Assembly: GCA_003693705.1 (NCBI GenBank)
Contig: RBZT01000312.1
Span: 124,001-188,000, forward strand
Direction: 5' to 3'
DNA length: 64,000 nucleotides
Source: Polymyxa betae A26-41
Lineage: Eukaryota > Protista > Endomyxa: Phytomyxea
Made by a program: the position numbers and the translations under genes. Under the pieces are notes generated by a model, which searched no databases, was not told where the DNA came from, and saw only the letters and a list, made by a program, of their open reading frames with translations. Below are positions 20,336-40,300 of the stretch, piece after piece; position 1 is the first letter of the stretch; every line of letters begins with the position of its first letter.

Positions 20336-21607
20336 ATGTTCAACTTCGGTGGCGGATTCGGCGGCGGGTTCGGGGGTGGTCGCCCAGCCAATGTCGACAA
20401 CAGCAAACTGTACGAAACCTTGAACGTGTCGAAGGATGCGACCCCCGACGAGATCAAGAAGTCGTACAGGAAGCTGGCCATCAGACATCATCCGGATAAG
20501 GGCGGCGACCCAGAGAAGTTCAAAGAGCTGAGCAAGGCATATAATGTTCTATCCGATCCAGAGAAACGTGAGCTATACGACAATTATGGTGAAGATGGAC
20601 TGAACGGCAAGGCCGGTGGCGGCGCTGCCGATATCTTCGACCTGTTCAGCGGCGGTCTGGGCCGTCGTGGACCCCGCTCCAAACCTCGAGGCGAAGACTT
20701 AGTCTACCCTTTGAAAGTCACATTGGAAGAACTCTATTCCGGAGTCATCAAGAAGCTTCGCATCACGAAAAATGTGATTTGCTCCAAATGCAATGGTGAA
20801 GGCGGTGAAGCTGGGCACGTTGCAGCTTGCCATAGCTGTAATGGTCATGGTGTCAAAGTCGTGGTCAAACAAATTGGACCTGGTATGATTCAGCAGATGC
20901 AGCAGACCTGTGACGTCTGCAAGGGACAAGGCAAAGTCATTCCTGAGCGCTACCGCTGTTCGGATTGCAGAGGCAATCGCGTCATCCAGAAGAAAGAGAG
21001 CATCGAATGCGCTGTCCAACGCGGTATGCGACACGGCCAGAAAATCACCTATGCCGGTATGGCAGACGAGGCTCCCGGTGTTATTACCGGCGATGTTGTC
21101 GTTGTTTTGCAACAGAAAGAACACGATCTTTTTGTCCGAAAAGGTGACGACTTGTTCATGCGCCAAACGCTTTCGCTTGCCGATGCGCTATGCGGCTTCT
21201 CGTTTGACATTCACCATCTCGACGGACGTGTTATTCGGATTCGAAGCGAGCCTGGCCATGTATACACCCATGGTGATATCAAAGTCATCGCAAGCGAAGG
21301 CATGCCGATGAACAGGAATGCATTCGTCAAAGCCAATTTGTATGTGGAGTTCAAAGTCGAATTCCCGCCGTCCGGATCGCTCACCGAGCAGGACCGTACC
21401 GTCCTTCGACAGATTCTGCCTTCATCCAAATCCACCAACATGGATATCGACAACAAAGACGACGACGTTGAAGTGTGCCATCTTCGGGATGTAGATATGG
21501 ATGCTGAAAGAGCAAAGAGGGAAAGAGAGCAGACCTCTGAGAGTCGCGAAGCTTACGAAGAGGACGAAGACCACGGCCATGCCAATGTCGGCTGCCGAAG
21601 CCAGTAA
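20336..21607 (+). CDS. DNAJA: Type I DnaJ/Hsp40 co-chaperone (DNAJA/Ydj1 family), intronless
   Basis: J domain with HPDKGGD, G/F region, four CxxCxGxG-type zinc motifs, C-terminal domain and CaaX prenylation end CRSQ. Confidence 0.97.
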   Translation: MFNFGGGFGGGFGGGRPANVDNSKLYETLNVSKDATPDEIKKSYRKLAIRHHPDKGGDPEKFKELSKAYNVLSDPEKRELYDNYGEDGLNGKAGGGAADIFDLFSGGLGRRGPRSKPRGEDLVYPLKVTLEELYSGVIKKLRITKNVICSKCNGEGGEAGHVAACHSCNGHGVKVVVKQIGPGMIQQMQQTCDVCKGQGKVIPERYRCSDCRGNRVIQKKESIECAVQRGMRHGQKITYAGMADEAPGVITGDVVVVLQQKEHDLFVRKGDDLFMRQTLSLADALCGFSFDIHHLDGRVIRIRSEPGHVYTHGDIKVIASEGMPMNRNAFVKANLYVEFKVEFPPSGSLTEQDRTVLRQILPSSKSTNMDIDNKDDDVEVCHLRDVDMDAERAKREREQTSESREAYEEDEDHGHANVGCRSQ

Positions 21608-24940: not shown

Positions 24941-25630
24941 TTATTCCAGGTTATAGGCTGCAGCTATTACCAGCATTGATAGAATCACCATTACAAAAGT
25001 GTTCGGAGCTGGAGAAGCCGTATTGGTAGCAGATTTCGACGTTGGATTAGGTGCAGGTGCTGTGGCGGCGGTCACTGATACGACAGCGGTGGTGGTCGAA
25101 TCAGTGGTGATGGTCGGAGTGTTGCCGGTTCTTGGCTTATCGTTGAAGTTAGTGAAGTATGTGCATGGGTCCTGGCCACCTTTGAAAGCACAGTAATGTC
25201 CATGGAAGTGCGACTCATCACAGCAAAGACTTCCAGCTGTGAGACCGGCCAGAGCTCCATCACATTGTCCATTATTCGTCATGCACGTACCTTGAGGTCC
25301 CTCCGCCCTGTGACATTACACCTGAATAACGACAAGATTTTTTCATAACATTGACAATACCAGTGGAATGGCCCTGTCCAATTCGAAAATGCTGGGTCTG
25401 ATACTGGTCCACACGTACCGAAATCTGAACACCAATATCCGTCTTGGCAGCCTGAACAGTGTGAGAGATTTGTCTAGCGGGAGTATAGATGGAAGCAGAC
25501 CTGTATTCTCGAAGAATGGACCGCATCGCCCGTCCAGTCTTGGCGTGTTCGAAGTGAATTCATCATAAAGAAAGGCAGCATGTGAAAATGCTGCCAACCA
25601 GACAATCGTAGCTGCCACCAAGCGACACAT
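24941..25630 (-). CDS. Secreted, probably GPI-anchored chitin-binding (CBM18/hevein-like) protein; 3 exons
   Basis: Signal peptide MCRLVAATIVWLAAFSHA. Splicing gives DGRCGPFFENTGCQDGYWCSDFGTCG (CBM18-like), a second Cys cluster CMTNNGQC..LCCDESHFHGHYC..DPC, a Thr/Ala/Pro stalk and a hydrophobic C-terminus FVMVILSMLVIAAAYNLE. Confidence 0.75.
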
Positions 25631-26129: not shown

Positions 26130-29100
26130 ATGGCTTCTGTGCAAACCTATTGCATCTGGTTGCTATCAACGCTCGTATGGACATTGGCTTATGCAGATGA
26201 TATCTGCTCAAAGAAGGAATGCGCTATTACTGATGGCTATGGTGTTGACTATCTCAATATGAACGTAACATCATCGGGCAGTCATTTATATCGTTACCGC
26301 ATTGCCTATCAGCCTGATAACAATGCTTGTCTCCATTCGTTATCGTTCATTCTGCCATTATGTATGTGCTCTGCCAGCGTCGATCTACGTGGTGGTCCGC
26401 TGAGTAATATTGCTGGCGTTTTCCAGAAGCAAGAGCTGGACGACGCCTGCCGAATTTGGTGGTCGGATCTGGACTCGGACGAGGGCATTGTTTCGTTTCA
26501 AGCTAAGGGGCAATTTGGGATGGGTGCCATATCTGTTCGAGCTGTTAGTGCTGGTACTGATTCGAAGTACGTTCCTATTTGTGGCCCAATATGTCAGAAC
26601 TCAGACTGTGAGTAATTTCATGTATTTCGGTAATTGTTTGTCTGACGCAAGATAATAGGCGAAGGGTCTTCAGCACCTACAGCGATTCCTTCCGGCTCTA
26701 CGAGGACGGCAACCTCTCACAAGCCGCTGTCCACAAAACAGCCTAATTTGACGTCTTCACCAAAGGTGACGAAATCGTCTCGGTCTACGGCGACGCTTAC
26801 GTCTCCTGGTTCTACAAAGGCGTCCACCATTGCACCTACTTCCGCCAAAATATCTGCTGCTAAATCACCTTCCTCGTCGAAGGCACCAACAAGACCTGGT
26901 TCATCTGTCGCAACCATCTCTCCGTCTACATCCTCGCTTATTGCTAAATCGTCCCCCTATCCTATTACATCTCCAAACTCGTTTTCACCAGGTTCCTCTA
27001 AGTTGCCGAACACTCCAACGTCCGCCAAAACTTCAATCGCCGGGTTGTCTCCGTCTTCGAATAGGCCTACAGCAACGCCTTCTCATGGCTCTACCAAAGC
27101 GCCCAGTTTTTCATCTTTATCCACCAAGGCCAATACAAATTCGCCGCCCTCTACAAAAATGCCGACTACTGCGCGTTCACATGGATCAACGAAGACGCAG
27201 ACATCTCCGTCCTCATACGTCAAGGCCACTACTAACGTTAGGCCCTCTACGAAGACGGCGACTGCCAGGCCTTCACCAGGCTCTAGTAACGCAGCGATCT
27301 CCCAATCCTCGTCTAGCAAGGCTCTTCTATCCCCATCAACTGCAAAAGGGTCTTCTTCCATGACTGCAACTATCTCAAAAGCGGCTCAGTCTAGCAAGGC
27401 TCCTTTATCTCCATCAACTGCACAAGGGTCTTCTTCCACGCCAAGGCCTACTATCTCTGCTTCTTCCACAAGCACACCTTCTTCGATACTTTCTGGCTCT
27501 ACAAATGCGCCTATCTCTCAGTCGTCATTCACAAAAGCCTCTTCTGCCCAACCATCTTCAAGGACGCAGACAACAAACGCATTTCCATCCACCAAGGCTT
27601 CTTCAAAGCCTTCTGATACAACGACGCCGTCTATCACTCCGTCCACATCGATCAAGTTATCTTCTGCATCCCCGGTCTCACCTTCAACTTGGGTTGCTAC
27701 TTATTCATCTCAACCCACACATCCACCGTCGCTATCAATGCCATCCACTTCTGAGGTGCCCTGCAATGAATCAGTTCCTTCTACCACTGCTGTGACTCCT
27801 TCGACATCAGTAATGGCGTCACCGCAAATATCATCAGCACCTCGCTCGACTTCTTCTACTACGCCCACAACTGCTCCATTTTCCTCGGCAGGACCAGCGT
27901 CTCCCTCAAAGTCAACGACTCTCAAAACTGTTTCAAGCACGTCTATTCAGAGCACTGCACCATTCAGTTCGGCTCCGACATCTCATCCCACAACACCTCC
28001 CGTGTTCACACCGACAACTTCATCTCAAGGACCTACTACTAAACCGGTCAGTCCGAGTACGTCCACGACGGGATCTACAACTGCGCCTTTACATGGCTCC
28101 ACATCGGTACCCACGACCAAATTGTCGGCTTCCACAAGAGCGCCTACAACGGCTTCTTCAACAAAAGCTGCTACGTCAAATCCGTCGTCCATGAAGCCCT
28201 CATCAAAAACACCTTCAGCTTCAGTGAAGACGTCTACTGCCGGTCCTTCATCTTCGTCGACTTCAATTAAAGTTTCTTCTGCACAAACGAAATCTTCAGT
28301 GCAGGCACCAATGTCGTCGCAAACTAAAGCACCGTCGTCTGTACCATTTACTCCTGTCGGACCCCCGTCGCCAACTCCTCAGTCAACATCGTCGCCACAA
28401 TCTCATACCCCATCATCTAGCTCAGCAACTTCGTCCGCTCCTAGGTCGCCGTCGACTATGATGACAGTTTCATCTTTACAGACGCCACCGCCGTCATCTT
28501 CCAATGCTCATAGTACTGGAACATTTAGTTCCGCTGGACCAACATTGATGTCAACTTCGGTGGCGGTATCTTCATCGAAATCTCCGTCCTCACAGCAAAC
28601 ATCTTCGCCACCTTCATCCAGTGCGCGCTCGAGCGCGCCATTTACTTCTGCTGGGCCTGCATCGCCGTCCATCTCAGTGATTTCCTCATCCTCGCAGACT
28701 CCACAGAGAACGCTGCCGCCATCTTCGTCAAGAGCAGCCTCAAGTACGCCATTTACTTCTGCTGGACCATCATCACCTTCCACCTCAAAGGGTGCCTCCT
28801 CATCTGCAAAGCCAACGCTGTCATCCCGTTCATACAACGAGCGCTCGAGTGCGCCATTTACTTCTGCTGGACCAGCATCACCTTCAACCATAAAGGGTGC
28901 GTCTTCATCTGCAAAGCCAACGTCGTCGCCACCTTCATCCAACGAGCACTCGAGTGCGCCATTTACGTCTGCTGGATCAGCATCGCCTTCAATCTCAAAG
29001 GGTGCGTCTTCATCCGCCAAGCCGACGTCGTCGCCACCTTCATCCAACGTACTCTCGAGTGCGCCATTTACTTCTGCTGGACCGGCATCACCTTCAACTA

Positions 29101-32100
29101 TAAAGGTTGCGTCTTCATCTGCAAAGCCAACGTCGTCACCATTTTCATCCAGCGAGCACTCGAGTGCGCCATTTACGTCTGCTGGACCAGCATCGCCTTC
29201 TACGTCACAGGGTGCGTCTTCATCCGCAAAGCCATCGCTGTCGCCACCTTCATCCAACGTGCTCTCGAGTGCGCCATTTACTTCTGCTGGACCGGCCTCG
29301 CCGTCCACCTCAGTGGTTGTATCTTCACTGCAGACTTCGTCCTCGCAACCAACGCTGTCGCCATCTTCATCGAGGGCGCGCTCAAGTATTCCCTCTACTT
29401 CTGCTGGACCAGCATCGCCTTCTACGTCGCAGGGTGCGTCTTCATCTGCAAAGCCAACCGCGTCTCCACCTTCATCCAACGTGCTCTCGAGTGCGCCGTT
29501 TACTTCTGCTGGACCGGCCTCGCCGTCCACCTCAGTGGTTGCATCTTCACTGCAGACTTCGTCCTCGCAACCAACGCTGTCGCCATCTTCATCGAGCGCG
29601 CGCTCAAGTATTCCCTCTACTTCTGCTGGACCAGGATCGCCTTCTACGTCGCAAGGTGCGTCTTCATCCGCAAAGCCAACCGCGTCTCCACCTTCATCCA
29701 ACGTGCTCTCGAGTGCGCCGTTTACTTCTGCTGGACCGGCCTCGCCGTCCACCTCAGAAGTTGCATCTTCCTCACACACTTCGTCCCCACATTCAACTTC
29801 TTTGTTATCATCATCCAGCGCACCCACACATGCGCCGGTTACTTCGATTGCGCCAATATCGCCGTCAACTTCCTTCAACACCCTTACAACAGCTCCGTTC
29901 ACTTCCGCTGGGCCAGCGTCCCCTTCAACCTCATCACAAAGCCCGCCTTCCACTGCTAATCCGACCTCGATTCTTGTTACTTCCTCTGCCATTACTACTC
30001 TTAAAGCTACAACGTCAGGCCAAATCGTAAAGGATAAAACTAGAAAGCCGACAACGAAAGCAGTATGCAGTCTACAGATGGAATGTTTGCCGGGTCTCCA
30101 AACGACGGTTTCTAATGGCTATAACATCACGGTTGCTTCGTTCCAGTATAATGCAGAAAGAGACCTGACAACGTATACTTATCATGTGAAGTTTCTTCCT
30201 GATAATTTAAATAGCCTCAATGGAGTCACATTCTTATTTTCTTCCTGCATGTGTGCAAATGATATGCAAGCAACTGCATTTCCTCCAAACGAGCCCGTGG
30301 ACATTGGAGGAAAATTCACATCCGAATCTGGACAGTCATGCTCAGCCATTTGGTCGAGTTTGAATGCCGATGAAGGAATGGTTTCGTACCAGTTTCCGGG
30401 ACTTCACAATGTCGGTCCGGTTGCGGTCGCTATTGACGATGGAGCTCCTCCTGATGGTTCTGAGGCAGTGATTTGCGGCCCAACGTGTGGATCGCCTTCA
30501 TGTCAAACGCCTTCAGCCTCGATGTCTTCTTCAGCGAAAAGGTCAACTTCAAAACTTACATCTGGACCTTCGACATCGCTTTCCAGCTCTACTTTGCAGA
30601 GGCAAACCTCACAACGACCAACCTCGCCCTCTTCGACTACTTCCACTACCTCATCAGCGGCTGTATCTTCTATCCCGAAGTCTTCGTGCAGCTCAAACCA
30701 GATGAAATGCGATCCGTCGCTACTGTCCAACATATCAAACGGATATGATTTGTCTTTGCTCGATGTGGCTTACAACTCAACCGCTGATACCACAGTTGTT
30801 ACTTACTCAGTCACACCTGTCTCGGATTCTCCAGCGCCTTTTAATACTGTGTTTTTGATGTTGCCGCAATGCCTTTGTTCTGACGTGAACCAAGTCATGG
30901 TGCAACGAATTAGAGAGGACGATTTAGGAGGGCGGTTTGACTTCGACAACGAGGCATGTTCTTTGATCTGGACTGGTTTAGAGGACAATCAAGGGTCGAT
31001 TTCTTTTTCATTGCTTGAAGAACATAACGTTGGTCCTATTGGATTTGTAATCGGAATGGATGACTCTCCAATTGTCCCATCCCAAATTTGTGGTCCAACC
31101 TGTGGGCCTGTCGTATGCTCGAGAACTTCTCCTCCTCCTTCGGTGGCACTCTCGATGTCTTCTAAAGCATCCACTAATATGCCTTTCACCTCGATTGGAC
31201 CCTTGTCTCCATCGACTTCATTTGCAAAATCTCAATCTCAGACAACGTCTCCGCAATCGAAGAAGTCATTGTCTTCCACTCAGAGGTCCACCACTGTACC
31301 ATTTATTTCTGTTGGACCAGCATCGCCCTCCACAACAGTAACGCCGTCTACAGCGTTAACTACATCTCAACCGCCAAAGCCATCGATGACATCATCATCT
31401 AAGACATCTTCTACCGGCCCAGTTACGTCTGCGGGGTCAGCGTCGTCTTTGCCTTCATCATCTGCGCCGGCTGTGGCTGGTTCATCTTCATCAACACCAT
31501 CAGCTACGCCTAGGATAACGTCATCGTCCCGTCCTGCTTCAATGGCAAGTACAACTGGCCGAGAGGTAATCGATAAGTCAAGAAAACCGACCACCAAAGC
31601 GCAGTGTGGTTTGCAGCAGGAGATGGCATGCTCATCAGGGCTCCTGTCAACTATTTCTAATGGTTACAATATCTCTATTGCTTCAATCCAATATAGCCCT
31701 GAATCGAATCTGACAAAGTATACATACCATGTGAAATTCCTACCTGATAATCCGAATCATCTCCTTGGAGTGTCATTCTTATTTTCTTCCTGCATGTGTG
31801 AAAATAATATGCAAGCAATTGTATTTCCTCCAAATGAACCCATTGATATAGGAGGTGAATTTACTGCCGAATCTGGACAGTCATGCTCTGCAAATTGGTC
31901 AGATCTGAATGCTGATGAAGGATTGGTTTCGTATCAGTTTCCCTCACAACACAATGTTGGTCCTATCGTCGTCTCTGTGGACGATGGGGCTCAGCCTGAA
32001 GGCGTACGAGCAATGATTTGTGGACCTGCCTGTGGATCATTTTCGTGTCAAACCCCTTCAACCTTTACACATTCTTCTTCAGCTGCTACTAGCTCAGCGA

Positions 32101-35100
32101 TGAAACCTTCTTCTAGTCATTCGTTGCCGTCGACTCTTTCCACTTCTATACAGCCGAAATTCACTTCTTCACATTCAATATCTGCAACACCGACACCATC
32201 GATCCTCTCCTCTATTCCACGGTCATCTTGTAACTCGAACCAGAAGAAATGTGATTCCTTCTTGATTTCCAACACCTCAAATGGCTATGCACTGTTTGTG
32301 GCACAAATGACTTATAATGCTACAATCGACGCGACAATTGCAATTTATCTGGTCACGCCCATTTTTGACTTATCGGTCCCCTTCAACACTGTGTTCTTCG
32401 TTTTGCCACAATGTCTTTGTGCTAGTGGCAATCAAGTCATAGCGCAGCGAGACAGAGAGGATGACCTAGGAGGACGATTTGTTTTCGACAGCAACGCCTG
32501 TTCACTGATGTGGACTGGATTAGAAAACAATGAAGGGTCGATTTCGTTCCTCTTCTCTGGAGAACACAATGTTGGACTTGTTGGATTTATGATTGGAATG
32601 GATGACTCTCCATTTGAACCATCACAAATTTGTGGTCCGACCTGTGGCCCTGTTGTATGCTCGACAACTCCAGCTACGTCACTAACTGCAACTTCAAAAG
32701 CCGCAACCAGCCAATCGACATCATTTGCAATCTCTTCTACAATGGTAACTCTTCCGTCACCGAGGCGCACATCTCAAAGATCAACAACCGTTTCTTCTTC
32801 TGCTATCACACCTTCTGTTCGATCGTCTGTTCCCAAATCGTCTTGTGGCTCAAATCAAATGATGTGCAGCTCTTTGTTGTTGTCCAATTCTTCGAATGGA
32901 TATAATCTGTCTTCTGCTAGTATCGCTTACGATGCCACGACTAATTTAACTGCTGTAACGTATTTAGTGACTCCCATTTCAGATTCGTCGACACCATTTA
33001 ATACTCTATTCGTGTTGTTACCGCATTGCCTTTGCGCTGCTGGAAGTAAAGTGGTGGAGCAGCGGAACAGCGCAGATGAGTTGGGCGGGCAGTTTATATT
33101 TGATGAAGATTCGTGTTCTTTGATGTGGATCAGCTTAGAGGATAATGAAGGTTCGGTTTCATTCATGCTGCCTGGTGAATATAATGTTGGGCCTGTTGGC
33201 ATCATGGTTGGCTTCGATGACTCTCCGTTAATACCATCTCAAATATGTGGGCCGGTTTGTGGACCCGCTGTATGCTCGACGCCCTCTCGCGCTCCGTCGA
33301 CGTCTACGACTGCAACTTCCCCTCAATCGACGTTGTTGTCTTCAAAACCATCTTCTACCGTATTGTCTTCAAAGGCTGTTCCCAGCACAAACCCGCCATG
33401 TAGCGCCATGCCTCAACCACAGTGCGACGACATCTCACGATCCTCAGTTTCTAATGGTTTCGAGCTTTCAGTTAAAAACATCAGCTTCAATTCCATCACT
33501 GGCAACACCACTTATACATATGCTGTCAGAAATCATTCTAACGCCTCTCAGCCATTCAACACTGTCTTCTTAACATTGCCGCGATGTCTTTGCTTAATGG
33601 GAATTGAAGTAATGCGTCGGCAGCTGGGACAAGATCTCGGAGGGCAATTCATCTTCGACAGTGAGTTCTGTTTAGCGTCGTGGACTGGATTAGAGATTAA
33701 TGAAGGAACGATTTCTTTCATGATTTCCGGCCAGTATGACGTTGGAATTGTTGGTTTAATGGTCGGAATGGATAAGTCTGCTATAATTCCATCCAAAGTG
33801 TGTGGCCCTTCGTGTACGCCTCTTCAGTGTCTATCGACAACTTCGCCCTCTCTGTCATCAAGAACAACTGTAAGGGCTACGACTCCTCCTACCACAAAGC
33901 CTTCTACCTTCACTATTCCAAGCTCTCTGTCTAGTACTCCCTCACCATCGACAACTGCTTATATCACCACTTCACAAACTACGTTGCCACAATTATCCAC
34001 TTCTAATCCTGTTACCTCCGCCGCAGTACTGTCAACATCATCTCGTTCGATGCCGCCAACCTCTGTAAAGGCTACTGCTTCATCAACGAGAACTCCCACA
34101 ACTATATCGACAACACAGCCTTTCACTTCTGCTACACCAACTTCATCGTTGCCTGCTTTTTCGTCGTCGATTACTGCCAAACGTACAACTTCATCAACAT
34201 CTCAGGCAAAATTGTCAACCACCAGATCTTTTACATCCGCTGCCCCAGCTTCGCCGACAGCATCTTCTGGACCAGTAACAACGCCAAGGAGATCCTGCGG
34301 TTCAAATATTATGCGATGCGATTCGCTCTTGTTAAGCAACATTTCCAATGGTTATGACATGTCGGTTGACACCATTTCCTATGATTCGGCTACTAACATG
34401 ACATCCGTCTCTTATCATGTGAAATCGGTATCAGAGACCTCTTTACCATTCAACACGGTATCACTGAAGCTGCATCACTGCCTCTGCTCTTCTGGGGTTC
34501 GCGTGTTGGCACAGCGAAATAGAACGGATTATTTGGGAGGGCAGTTTATTTTTGACAACAATGCCTGCTCGTTGATGTGGACTGGCCTAGAAAGTAATCA
34601 AGGATCAGTATCATTTATGTTACCAGGTGAATATAACGTCGGACCTGTTGAGTTTATGATCGAAATGGACGACTCTCCAGTAAGGCCATTTACGATATGT
34701 GGTCCAGTTTGTGGACCTGTCGTATGCTCAACGACTTCACCACCTATTCGATCGACATCGAACATTTCACCCTCTAAAAGCTCGACATCATCAATAGGCT
34801 CATCTTCTGTTATACCGTCTTCATCAAACGTCCGAAGTTCAACGCCATCGTGTAGCCTTATGCCTCAGCCTCAATGCACCAATGCTTCTAGATCTACGGT
34901 TTCCAATGGCTATGGAATTTCTGTCCAGAATATCACTTTTCATGCTGCCAGCGGTAACACTACAGTTGTCTATGCCATTAGATCCATATCAAACTCTTCT
35001 GTGCCATTCAACACTGCTTTCTTAGCATTGCCTCGGTGTTTCTGCTTAGAAGGGGTGGAAGTAATGCGACTGCAATCGAAAAACGATTTCGGTGGCCAGT

Positions 35101-37238
35101 TTTCTTTTGACAAAGATGTCTGTATAGCAACTTGGAGTGGAATAGAAGGCACTGGAGGCACAGTTGCCATTATGCTTCGCGGGCAGTATGAAGTTGGAGA
35201 TGTTGGCTTCATGGTAGGAATGAATGATGTTGCTATAATCCCGTCTAAAATCTGTGGCCCGTCATGCACTCGTGTTCAATGCAATTCAACCAGGTCGCCG
35301 TCTTCTTCACTGCCATTGACATCAGCGCTACCCGGTGTCACGTCATCTTCGCTGTTACGTACATCGACATCCAAGCCTCGAGTCTCGTCGCCTGTTCCCT
35401 CATTTGCGGCGACTAGTTTAGCATGTCCATTAGACCAGACCATGCAGTGTCCGAATATGATGGGGCCTTCTAGCATCTCGCACAACACTACATCACGTTA
35501 TTCTGTTAATGTCGAACGAATCTACTACGTTCCTTCTTCAAACCAGACCGTTTTTAACTATTCTGTTCGTTACCAAAATTCACCTGAACGCCTTCTCCAA
35601 GCTGTCAAGTTTTGGTTCATGCCTTGTGTATGCCAGCACAACAATTCCGTTCAGACTTCGTTTGCTCGGAACAACCGAACTGTTTCAAATAGTCGACCAC
35701 CAACAGATAGAAATTGCTCTATCATGTTTACTAAGCTGGATTCTAATCTTGCATCGATTTCTTTCCAGTTGCAAGGAAGGTATAAAATCGGTACGGTACG
35801 TGTTTTGGTGGAAGCGCAGCAAGCAGAGGCAAGAACTTTACACGTTTGTGGTCCTGTTTGTGGTAAATTCCAATGTCCAATGCTGTCAAGCAAACCAAAC
35901 CCTCACAAGAGTACAACTTCATCTGTAAGTCAACTGCTTTAAGGATATGGCTAGTCTCATTTATGATGTTTTTAGAATGTCGCAAGTCCCACCATATCTA
36001 GACGTTTTTCATCTCCGTTAACTGGTCAACCACATACACCTGTAAGCGATCACACACCGAATACACCAGCTGTGCAAACGCCTGCACACGAACCAGCTCC
36101 AACTCCTGCAGGAGATTCACACGCCCATGTAACGATCACTGCAATTCAGATAGATGTTTGAATCCTTACTTCTCGGTGCTTAGGATAATACGCCAACCCG
36201 CACGCCAACTTACGGTGGAACTCGTGCTCATTATGGAACTCTCCCTAATGTATTTCTGCTTTCTATCTTTTTAAAATTCTTAAATTGATTCTCGCTTCAG
36301 GATGGGTCGGGCTGTGCAGCATTACCCACTGTTGCTAGCTGCAAACTGCTATTTTCTTACCCACTATATAATGGGCCCGGTCTTCTGAGAGCAGGTCTTG
36401 CGACGGATGCTAAGGCTCAGCAAGCTATTCCCATCATGAATTCGGCAACTATGTTTTCATATACGACTTGGATTTACCCGCAACAATTTGGTCCTGGAAA
36501 CATCACTGTATTCGGTCGCAGCAATGATATCAATAATCAATTGCAAGGACTCCCCAGTCTTGTTCTAACTCCTGACGGAATGGTAACCTGCTTCTGCTGT
36601 CCCATAATTGTTTACCTGAAAGTGATTTTCCAGGCTAGAGTCAACCTACAAACCCGCTCTTCAGACAATATCAGTTGGACTTTTGAAACGTGTCAATCTA
36701 CAACGCCTTTAACGATTAACCAATGGACACAAATTTCGATTACGGTCGACACAACTGCAAGGCTTATTAATCTGTGGTATAATGACGGAAGTAATGGCCG
36801 CTTATGGGCATGCGTCTTCAAACCTAGTGTCCGGTTTGTCTCTACACCGGCAGCATTCAGCCTGGCATCATCTGTGGCGACTTCGAAGATTTGTATCGGA
36901 CAAGTCAATTTCTATCCCAATGTCATAAGAACATCAGACTTGAAGCTTTGTCTCACGCCTCAGCCATTGTTATCTAACCAGACTGGAGACCATTTATCTC
37001 CCGCATCGGTAAGGTACCCACTGCTGAGCTCTGCTTGTACGCTCATAGTTTATAGGATAAGAGTGATCCCAAAGCGCCGACCTCGTCTAAACCCAGCGCT
37101 GTAACCGTGGCATCCGTCACGGTTGCCTGCGTTGTGGGTGCATGCTGTATGTCATTACTGGGATGCTTCTATGTTCGTCGTAAACGTGCTCGTGCTGCAG
37201 CCGCAATTGCAGCTAATGAGAACGCTTCATACCCTTAA
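26130..37238 (+). CDS. Giant (~3600 aa) type I membrane mucin-like surface protein with 10 Cys-rich repeat domains and a LamG/ConA-like domain
   Basis: Exons 26130-26607, 26659-35924, 35976-36128, 36184-36249, 36301-36582, 36634-37008 and 37056-37238 splice in frame through GT-AG introns. Product has a signal peptide, S/T/P-rich stalks, repeated SNGY...C.C...GG.F...C...W..L...G..SF...G.YNVG...ICGP.C domains, FSYTTWIYP..NQWTQISITVD (LamG-like), and TM VTVACVVGACCMSLLGCFYV followed by RRKR. Confidence 0.88.
28620..29935 (+). repeat. Coding minisatellite: 105-bp units, then 222-bp higher-order units (SSAPFTSAGPASPST...)
   Basis: Anchor GAGTGCGCC recurs at 28847, 28952, 29057, 29162 and 29267 (period 105), then at 29489 and 29711 (period 222). 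Confidence 0.92.
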
Positions 37239-37322: not shown

Positions 37323-40300
37323 TTATCTATGAATAAATTGAAGTGACGTCCTATGTTCTCGATTTCGATATTTCTCCACATCAATGTGCATTTGTGCAAC
37401 AAGCAATTCAAAATCAACTTGGGATTCAAGAGCCTTATCAAAACAATCCAGGCTTCCGTAAACAACGGAAAATAAGCTAAAGTGAATGAACCTTCGGGTA
37501 GATACTTGGAAGTTATAGTGCGACATTAATTGCAACGTTGCCAGATACATTGCAGGAGACCTGAAATAGGGCCTATATGAGGAAGAGCTGTACATCTGCA
37601 TTAAAGCTTCCTGGGATGAACGTCTTGTTACATGATTCGTGAGTCTAGTGATATGATTAAGAATATCAACGTTCGGACCTGAGTTGATAACCGATGCTGT
37701 AAATTTCTTGAATGGATCAATTAAAGGCAACTGTAGATTTCCCTCAGGAAGAGACAGAAACGATTCAAGCTCAACCGGGACGGCAATTCCCATTGCGGGA
37801 TCTTGTGGGAAGTCCCATCCGAGAGAAGACAAGAGTTTCCTGCCATCACTGTGCATTGACCATATGCCGAGAATATAATAACAAGTGGCTCGAATTGATA
37901 AAACAGGATGCTTAGCTGCCTTTTCAGCCGTGTAAGATATAATGCAAACATGGTGATTCCGGATGCTGATATCTCTGAGAAGCTCAAAGCCAAGCGTAGA
38001 GCTACCGGAAAGAGCTAGATTCCAGAGGCTCACAGGCATTTTGTTCATTTCATCCTGGAGAACATTTTTAATGTGAGAGTGCAGATAGGGTTCAATGATC
38101 TTGCATCCCAGCTCGGTCCGAGTTAGCTGCCCGAACAGATGTGGGGCAGGACATATCGGAAAAGGACCACCGACCGCATAAATATCAAGAGAGAAGAAGA
38201 TCGCCTCTAACGCCAGCGTTTCGTGAGATGAGAACCGCCATGTTACTGTTCCATCAGCGATATCGAACGGGGCAGGACGCTCTTGAACGGAACGTAGTGC
38301 ATTCTGGTAATCGGCAATCAAACACTGAACGAGTCAAATGAAAGGATTACCTGTAGAACAGCAGACGAGCAGCTTCTGCTATACCAGAATTTGGGAATCA
38401 GTCCAGAAAGGGACTGCTTACCAAACGACAATACTGCCCGAATAGTAATGTTATAATTAGATATCAAATAATGGGATCGAAGCCCTTGATCATTGAGAAC
38501 GTAACAGGCGACACGGCCACGAAGTGACCCAGTACTGGGACATGAGATCAATTCAAAAAAGCAGTCAGACTCTATCTGAACAGCTTCATTATCGGCAGAA
38601 ATTGCGGATAGTTCCAAGTGAAAAGGAGTATCATGAAGGCGCTCCAAATACCACTAAAACAAAATGTCAATCGACATCGCTTAATTGTCCGTCTTTGCAG
38701 ATACCTCAAAATCTGAGGTTGACCGTTTGAACCGAGGGCTGACCTCTATTCTATCGAAATTGAGTGCCGCCATCAAGGCAGTTTCCAGCTCCGTCACGTA
38801 GCAATCTGAAAATAAATTAGAGCATTTGGAGAGGCAATGTGAAGACATACCAGATTCCGTTGATTCCCAAATTTCGATTTGTTTAACAATCCAATTGTTG
38901 TTCGCAGCAATCTTAAAGCCTTCTTCATGTCCAACTAAGCGAAGCATTAGGCGGTCAATATAAGGAAAGTCTCCTTCAGGAGCCTAGCCATTAGCTCAAG
39001 CTAAATCCACATCCCGAGAATGCAATGCATAATCACCTTCCAGTCTCTAAGTAGTTTGCAAATGGCAGAAAGATATCCGGGATCATCACAAGCCTGTTCT
39101 AAAATGTAGGATACTTCGACAGCCAGGTCGGTCCAGTTCAAGAGATGCTTGACCAGAAGAGGAAGCCCCCATTCTTCGAACATGTGAACTTCCAAGCGCA
39201 TCATCACGAGCAGCTGTTGAATTAAATATCGCCGAAGATTCAACGATCCTGTGGAAGGTTAGCAATAGTGCTACCTGCAATAGATTGTCAAACCATGATC
39301 AAGCCAGAAGTCCAAAATTGCACGTGAGGGAAGATGCTTACTGTAGTCCAAATGGCATGCAATTACTCCTGGCAACGATCAGTTTTTTTTAAAGAGACTA
39401 GATGAATTTACTGGTCATATAATCCAGAGCAGGGTTCAGAGCGATTCCTTCAAGCAAGTCTTGCAATCCAGTTTTTTCCAAAAGACGCATTCCTTGGGCT
39501 GATTCAGACAAGATCCCGATCATTATGAGATAGACACGACCGGCACCACATTGCACGCCAGCACGACTGAATAGTGACGCCTGAATGCTGAGCGTCGACG
39601 TCATTAAAGTAACGAAATGATTCAGAATATTCTTACGCTTTAGCGTTAGAAGTGAAGCATCTCAACCTGAGCATTTCAACCAGTTGTTCCACACAAGAAG
39701 TTAACAAAGCAGAAGATTCAGGACCGCAAACACAAAGAACTCGTGTAGCACAGCATGCTAGTCGCATATACTGAATGTGGTCGAGATCCCAGGGCATCAA
39801 AGCCAAGTTGCCTTTCGACGGATGCAGAAAACTCGCCAGCCGTGGAAGGAACTTTGTTCTAAGAGTAATTGAGCCAGAAAAGCAGCACACTCATAAAGCG
39901 ATAACTTATTCAGAACCGTCATGATGTTGCTGGGATGCTTCAGCAACGGGCCCTGCATAATGGCAAGACATGCGTCTAGTTCCCATTCCGAATGGTTACG
40001 CTGATCGGCGTCCATAACGCGAGTATCCTTGAGCATCATGAACAGGGCATCTTCATCAATGACGTCGTAAAGAGAAGCTTCACGAATAGAGCAGTGTAAA
40101 TCTGCCCTGTAATGAGCTCCGTTGCATTCGCTTCGGATTGCCAGCGTTTCGAAACTTGCCTAATAAAAAGGTGTTCAGTGTTCAGAACAGAGCAGTGAAC
40201 AAATTCTACTTTGTTGGCATTTCTAGAGCTGATTTTTGTGGCGATAAAGTTGTAAAATCGATCACTGTTTTGTGATGAACCAGTAGAGCTGTCGACGAAC

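What the first reader, a model, noticed from the sequence alone, without database searches (positions are those of the whole stretch)
26130..37238. ~3600-aa type I membrane protein built from ten copies of an unrecognised ~145-aa Cys-rich domain
Seen: copies at about 26200-26607, 30064-30503, 30687-31118, 31604-32049, 32229-32660, 32843-33274, 33398-33830, 34296-34727, 34851-35282 and 35423-35876. Consensus C-x5/6-C..SNGY.(L/I)....Y....T..TY.V......FNTV...LP.C.C..LGG.F.FD...C...W.GL....G.ISF...G.YNVG.V....G.D......ICGP.C...C. Mucin-like S/T/P spacers, many N-glycosylation sequons, a LamG-like domain, one TM and a ~21-aa tail ending NENASYP. Inference: a disulfide-bonded beta-sandwich adhesion or lectin domain that I cannot assign to a named family. 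The ORF track splits the gene and hides the signal peptide and TM.
Basis: partly seen in the sequence, partly recalled or inferred. Interest (0 to 1): 0.8.

Follow-up and report, generated by a model that had tools for sequence, protein, structure and literature searches.

The report
Giant surface mucin of beet parasite
The root parasite that spreads rhizomania virus in sugar beet makes a 3,600-residue membrane-anchored surface protein with ten copies of an unnamed domain, otherwise found only in a related parasite and in scattered bacterial surface proteins; it is a good candidate for how these parasites stick to roots or to each other.

Summary
Observation confirmed. The genome is Polymyxa betae. 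A single-copy gene of 7 exons encodes exactly 3,600 aa: signal peptide, ten 8-Cys domains in S/T/P-rich mucin spacers, a LamG-like domain, one TM helix and a 20-aa tail. One cDNA contig splices all five 3' introns as predicted and joins domains 6-10 to the TM; intron 1 was not tested.

Best reading: a multivalent surface adhesin or tether; ligand and life stage are unknown. It is a new variant of a known kind (membrane mucin adhesin) built from an unnamed domain family. Earlier scan notes cover this same stretch; none seen reported the domain on other DNA.

The parts
26130..26607 (+). exon 1: ATG, predicted signal peptide (about 22 aa, 26130-26195, ending A-Y-A) and domain 1
   Evidence: signal peptide by inspection only
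26205..26607 (+). domain D1 (most divergent copy; its last Cys codon is split by intron 1)
26608..26658 (+). intron 1 (51 nt, GTGAGT..TAATAG, phase 1); predicted, not tested by RNA
   Evidence: same length as four confirmed introns
26659..35924 (+). exon 2 (9,266 nt): 1,132-aa mucin stalk, then D2-D10 with S/T/P spacers
   Evidence: 3' part on cDNA
28605..29786 (+). coding minisatellite in the stalk (105- and 117-bp units, 222-bp higher-order unit up to 92% identical)
30066..30503 (+). domain D2 (type A)
30687..31118 (+). domain D3 (type B; modelled)
31605..32048 (+). domain D4 (type A, 70% identical to D2)
32229..32660 (+). domain D5 (type B, 66% identical to D3)
32844..33275 (+). domain D6 (type B)
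33399..33830 (+). domain D7 (type C)
34296..34727 (+). domain D8 (type B)
34851..35282 (+). domain D9 (type C, 60% identical to D7)
35424..35876 (+). domain D10 (divergent, basic, 6 sequons)
35976..36128 (+). exon 3 (P/T/H-rich linker)
   Evidence: cDNA joints
36184..36249 (+). exon 4 (linker)
   Evidence: cDNA joints
36301..36582 (+). exon 5: N-terminal part of the LamG/ConA-like domain
   Evidence: (37% identical to orthologue)
36634..37008 (+). exon 6: C-terminal part of the LamG/ConA-like domain
   Evidence: 36% identical to orthologue
37056..37238 (+). exon 7: TM helix (about 37107-37175, Cys-rich), basic stop-transfer motif, 20-aa tail, stop
   Evidence: (56% identical to orthologue)

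Best explanation
A single-pass plasma-membrane mucin of Polymyxa betae that works as a multivalent, host-facing adhesin or tether. The signal peptide sends it through the secretory pathway (inferred). The S/T/P spacers are O-glycosylated into stiff rods and the domains are N-glycosylated and disulfide-stapled (inferred from composition). The TM helix and basic motif anchor it, with a 20-aa tail whose end is not conserved (topology from sequence and cDNA). The result is a very long filament that shows ten beta-sandwich modules and one LamG-like module outside the cell. Weak binding by many modules to glycans or glycoproteins of the root surface or host-cell interface adds up to firm attachment (inferred, not shown). 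The module probably shares an origin with a bacterial surface module (homology shown, direction of any transfer not), gained three more Cys pairs, and was amplified by duplication of domain pairs (A-B, A-B, B-C, B-C; shown).
For: Architecture and splicing. Conserved single-copy orthologue with domain + LamG + TM. In a second strain 12 of 16 changed codons are synonymous. Bacterial homologues occur in signal-peptide or lipoprotein-bearing proteins beside PKD, DUF11, DUF7507, SdrD_B and MopE repeats, typical surface and stalk modules. Fold neighbours include chitin/cellulose-binding modules and MSCRAMM or pilin adhesins. Zoospore attachment of Spongospora drops after trypsin or PNGase F treatment of roots, and its mechanism is unknown (PMC9944879).
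Against: No binding or localisation data, and life stage unknown. The fold is generic: mu-adaptin, alpha-2-macroglobulin and p53 score about as well. One Trp per repeat, so no CBM2-type platform. No hit recognisable as Plasmodiophora brassicae, although it also attaches zoospores to roots. The genome holds several other giant mucin or adhesin candidates (unchecked notes).
Confidence: 0.4

Rival explanations
1. Self-directed tether or glue. It links the plasma membrane to the parasite's own chitin-containing cyst or resting-spore wall, or cross-links neighbouring spores into the sporosorus, working like the rod-plus-globule pherophorins of the volvocine matrix.
Against: No DUF3707 HMM match at any E-value tried. 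No aromatic platform. The Spongospora identity of P0002 is inferred, not shown. Absence in P. brassicae may be annotation failure, divergence or phylogeny. The neighbour's CBM18 label was not confirmed on its pieces.
Confidence: 0.28
2. Passive glycocalyx. The domains are protease-resistant spacers in a protective, space-filling coat at the host-parasite interface; any binding is done only by D1 at the tip or by the LamG-like domain.
For: In bacteria the module sits among recognised stalk or spacer repeats (DUF11, SdrD_B, PKD). Copies diverge to 19-30% while Cys and core residues stay, which fits structural constraint only. 29 sequons lie on the domains. D1 is held 1,132 residues from the next copy, like a tip adhesin on a stalk.
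Against: Three subtypes are kept in order, and the orthologue's copies group with type A, which suggests subtype-specific roles. Acidic domains alternate with basic spacers.
Confidence: 0.22
3. Signalling mucin or wall-stress sensor of the Msb2/Wsc1 kind, passing mechanical or host cues inward.
For: Type I mucin topology with Cys-rich extracellular modules; TM and juxtamembrane motif 56% identical to the orthologue.
Against: The tail is only 20 aa, and its distal half, including the Tyr, is not conserved in the orthologue.
Confidence: 0.06
4. Exon 1 is a separate gene, or a retained-intron isoform, giving a 161-aa secreted single-domain Cys-rich protein. This does not exclude the other readings.
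For: Without splicing, exon 1 ends in a stop just after the last Cys, leaving a complete domain. Intron 1 was not covered by the read test.
Against: Exon 2 has no signal peptide of its own. Intron 1 has a consensus donor, the modal 51-nt length and the right phase, and rebuilds the same Cys-Glu.
Confidence: 0.08

Closest known systems
Unnamed bacterial extracellular beta-sandwich module (Desulfobacterota, Anaerolineae/Chloroflexota, Leptolyngbyaceae; e.g. Desulfonema magnum)
   Same: Full-length profile homology (hhalign 97.6%, E 4.5e-12, 127 columns); invariant Tyr, Cys and G-P-x-C, near-invariant Trp; often in tandem in secreted proteins
   Different: About 125 aa with usually two Cys, against about 145 aa with eight; no mucin/LamG/TM architecture seen; the eukaryotic copies form their own branch
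CBM2 and chitinase C-terminal binding-type domains (PDB 8ovr, 6ezr, 5dhe, 3ndy, 2rtt, 1exg)
   Different: 5-12% identity, no Pfam match, one Trp instead of the exposed triad; non-lectin proteins score alike
Pherophorins (DUF3707, PF12499) of volvocine algae
   Same: Cys-rich globules of about 150 aa separated by glycosylated rods; nearest named clusters by language-model features
   Different: No HMM match; spacers are Ser/Thr-rich rather than hydroxyproline rods; membrane-anchored with ten globules rather than a secreted dumbbell
Membrane mucin adhesins of eukaryotic microbes: Cryptosporidium GP900, fungal Als/Flo11 (own knowledge, not tested here)
   Same: Signal peptide, Cys-rich or Ig-like globules, O-glycosylated S/T stalk, membrane anchor (TM with short tail in GP900)
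   Different: No sequence homology found; ten interspersed copies plus a LamG-like domain is a different build
PbALE of Plasmodiophora brassicae (PMC13738674)
   Same: Plasmodiophorid protein described as mucin/adhesin-like
   Different: Secreted effector with heptapeptide repeats; the paper describes no such Cys domain or TM

Membership tests
Type I membrane mucin | N-terminal signal peptide | tested here: inconclusive
   Hydrophobic stretch ending A-Y-A at residues 7-22 by inspection; no signal-peptide predictor available
Type I membrane mucin | S/T/P-rich extracellular tracts | tested here: met
   59-68% S/T/P in all nine spacers
Type I membrane mucin | One TM helix and short cytoplasmic tail | tested here: met
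   Only segment above 2.0 on a 19-residue KD window is in exon 7, followed by a basic motif and a 20-aa tail
Type I membrane mucin | Ectodomain and TM on one transcript | tested here: met
   D6-D10, LamG and TM on one spliced contig; D2-D5 share the same open exon; the exon 1 join was not tested
Type I membrane mucin | Actual O-glycosylation and surface display | not testable with these tools
   Needs proteomics or microscopy
Unnamed bacterial beta-sandwich module | Reciprocal full-length profile match above controls | tested here: met
   Bacteria-only HMM scores all 14 plasmodiophorid copies 11-35 bits; best of 2,800 shuffles 6.6, reversed 4.0; over the whole genome it rings only on D3, D2, D1
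CBM2 | Pfam CBM_2 sequence match | tested here: not met
   No hit
CBM2 | Three exposed Trp forming a binding platform | tested here: not met
   One Trp per copy, two in D1; the triad requirement is from own knowledge
CBM2 | Beta-sandwich topology | tested here: met
Pherophorin (DUF3707) | PF12499 HMM match | tested here: not met
   the genome searches had no positive control above cut-off
Pherophorin (DUF3707) | Remote similarity of the globular domain | tested here: inconclusive
   Atlas feature scores 0.92 (190 of 256 shared) and 0.88; not among the rows of the Atlas shape search; no pherophorin sequence or model on hand for a direct comparison
LamG / ConA-like (PF13385) | Score above the gathering cut-off | tested here: inconclusive
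YcnI / DUF1775 | Sequence match | tested here: not met

The most novel reading that the evidence does not exclude
The module is the founding member of an unrecognised extracellular superfamily linking bacterial surface proteins, algal pherophorins and a giant-virus protein, and this mucin is the plasmodiophorid's main attachment or sporosorus-cementing molecule, present in the sporosorus-forming virus vectors and missing from Plasmodiophora.
Probability: 0.15. Interest if true: 0.8.

Novelty: new variant of a known kind. Interest (0 to 1): 0.55.

Why it matters
The parasite-side molecules for zoospore attachment and spore-ball formation in plasmodiophorids are not known (attachment mechanism stated as unknown in PMC9944879). 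A recent structure-guided secretome survey that included P. betae removed TM proteins and proteins over 1,000 aa (PMC12503489), so this protein would have been filtered out. It is a single-copy, expressed, conserved candidate made of 150-aa domains that can be expressed one at a time. That makes attachment testable in an obligate biotroph and offers a possible target for blocking a virus vector. It also defines a domain family that Pfam lacks.

Tried and rejected
No sequence hit in Pfam, NCBIfam or the PDB for the window's domains or for either alignment. The weak InlJ_IG hit (E 0.002, below cut-off) and the 2xbt scaffoldin hit (E 1.4) were set aside. The word searches found only the window's own fragment, then nothing with the mixed alignment, then no relative of 1,700-5,400 aa among the 8,000 candidates scored; these are limited by length and shared words. 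P0004 (6,700 aa, E 2e-13) is an artefact of summed weak scores on a haemagglutinin-like repeat protein with 3 Cys. The metagenome scan found no confirmed relative; plasmids none. DUF3707 HMM searches were blank. Two 2026 RNA runs held no reads of this stretch and so gave no test. The organism of P0002/P0003/P0005 could not be looked up. Decroes et al. 2022 (Genomics) is not held. As the operators asked, the spliced model was searched exon by exon by reference; the joined protein was not built or searched, so the LamG-like domain was never scanned or folded whole from the window. Disulfide pairs could not be read because model coordinates are not returned.

Full report
Source. The window's genome has 27,085,814 bases in 1,001 contigs. 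The published draft of Polymyxa betae has 1,001 contigs, 27,085,946 bp and 45.1% GC (PMC6328671). Each has eight Cys in the aligned span, and eleven columns are invariant. A profile of the ten finds these ten places and nothing else in the genome, so the gene is single-copy as far as that search sees. Six GT..AG introns of 47-55 nt give seven exons and exactly 3,600 codons. Public run X2 has a 4,476-nt contig spanning 32579-37309 that lacks exactly the five 3' introns, so D6-D10, the LamG-like region and the TM are on one transcript. Run X1, a strain about 96% identical, also splices the last intron, and 12 of its 16 changed codons are synonymous. Intron 1 was outside the 5,951 letters laid and is untested. 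It has a good donor, the modal length and the right phase, and exon 2 has no signal peptide of its own. All searches were made exon by exon; the joined protein was not built or searched.

Anatomy. A signal peptide of about 22 aa (by inspection) leads into D1. A 1,132-aa mucin stalk follows, holding a young 105/117/222-bp minisatellite. Then come D2-D10 with 37-158-aa spacers of 59-68% S/T/P, a LamG-like domain, the TM helix and a 20-aa tail. Of 37 sequons, 29 lie on the domains. D1-D8 are net acidic, while the spacers carry K/R and almost no D/E. Identities and spacer lengths record duplication of domain pairs, D2-D3 to D4-D5 and D6-D7 to D8-D9 (71% and 65% at DNA level against 58% for a control pair).

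Relatives. Pfam, NCBIfam and the PDB give no sequence match. The word search found only the window's own fragment, so the exhaustive search was used. It gave P0002, an 884-aa fragment with two such domains, a LamG-like domain and a TM that match exons 5, 6 and 7 at 37, 36 and 56%, and two smaller fragments. These are UniParc records without an organism. That they come from the 2015 Spongospora subterranea transcriptome (PMC4471660) is my inference from their Met-less fragment form and accession range. No hit was recognisable as Plasmodiophora brassicae; this is suggestive only. The same search gave six bacterial proteins at E 3e-10 to 1e-3.

The bacterial link is solid. Profile against profile gives 97.6%, E 4.5e-12 over 127 columns, with invariant Tyr, Cys and G-P-x-C. 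A 40-row bacteria-only HMM scores all 14 plasmodiophorid copies at 11-35 bits, against at most 6.6 for 2,800 shuffles and 4.0 for reversed copies. Run over the whole P. betae genome it rings only on D3, D2 and D1. The bacterial module occurs in Desulfobacterota, Chloroflexota and Cyanobacteriota but is rare: beyond the seed genomes, 0 of 150, 2 of 300 and 1 of 300 sampled genomes. Most of its carriers have signal peptides or lipoprotein starts, and it sits beside PKD, DUF11, DUF7507, SdrD_B, MopE-type repeats or a C11 peptidase. No Pfam or NCBIfam model covers it. Most bacterial copies have two Cys, matching eukaryotic C65 and C142, which is probably the ancestral disulfide (inferred); the eukaryotic copies add six. 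The eukaryotic copies form one long branch, so no donor can be named.

How it most likely works. Shown: an expressed, conserved, membrane-anchored mucin carrying repeated beta-sandwich modules whose bacterial kin are surface modules. Inferred: it extends far from the membrane and binds by avidity. I put host-facing adhesion first (0.40), since attachment in Spongospora depends on root-surface protein and N-glycans and has no known parasite partner (PMC9944879). Close behind is tethering to the parasite's own chitinous wall or gluing of spores into sporosori (0.28). Polymyxa and Spongospora form sporosori and Plasmodiophora does not (PMC7756720, PMC5772912), which would fit the hit pattern if the missing P. 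brassicae hit is real. A passive glycocalyx with binding only at the tip (0.22) and a signalling mucin (0.06) follow.

Verdict. The feature is real and well supported. It works like a membrane mucin adhesin and meets the sequence tests for a type I membrane mucin. It is not a CBM2 or pherophorin member by the tests run. What is new is the unnamed domain family, its patchy spread across bacteria and plasmodiophorids, and its use ten times in one parasite surface protein. Novelty: new variant of a known kind. Interest 0.55.

Noticed in passing
window 24941-25630 (-): Small spliced gene head-to-head with the mucin, 500 bp between the starts: signal peptide, Cys/His-rich part, T/A/P stalk and a hydrophobic C-terminus like a GPI signal.
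   Followed up: partly
window 37323-39300 (-): RICTOR gene (RICTOR_V, E 9e-14) ends about 85 bp from the mucin's stop; the mucin cDNA runs to 37309.
   Followed up: partly
L045 (GCA_000510975.1, AYZY01092733.1): A 582-bp contig of another public assembly is identical to window 29934-30515. From memory that assembly is a sugar beet genome, so this would be P. betae contamination; not checked.
   Followed up: partly
window 26130-26615 (+): If intron 1 is retained, exon 1 ends as a complete 161-aa secreted Cys-rich protein; the last Cys-Glu is the same with or without splicing.
   Followed up: no
BFVD A0A5K0UAN9: An uncharacterised 542-aa Yasminevirus protein matches the bacterial model (E 1.3e-4, TM 0.67, 17% identity).
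   Followed up: no
L014 (G000:C685:10916-11425): A second, weaker LamG-like stretch in the genome resembles the orthologue's LamG region (E 3.6e-4).
   Followed up: no
window 20336-21607 (+): Intronless DnaJ (Hsp40 type A)-like ORF of 423 aa, by inspection.
   Followed up: no
L018, L023, L024: Chloroflexota carriers of the bacterial module end in, or near, an L-P-L/I-V-x-R type C-terminal motif that looks like a surface-sorting signal; L018 joins the module to a clostripain-family peptidase.
   Followed up: no
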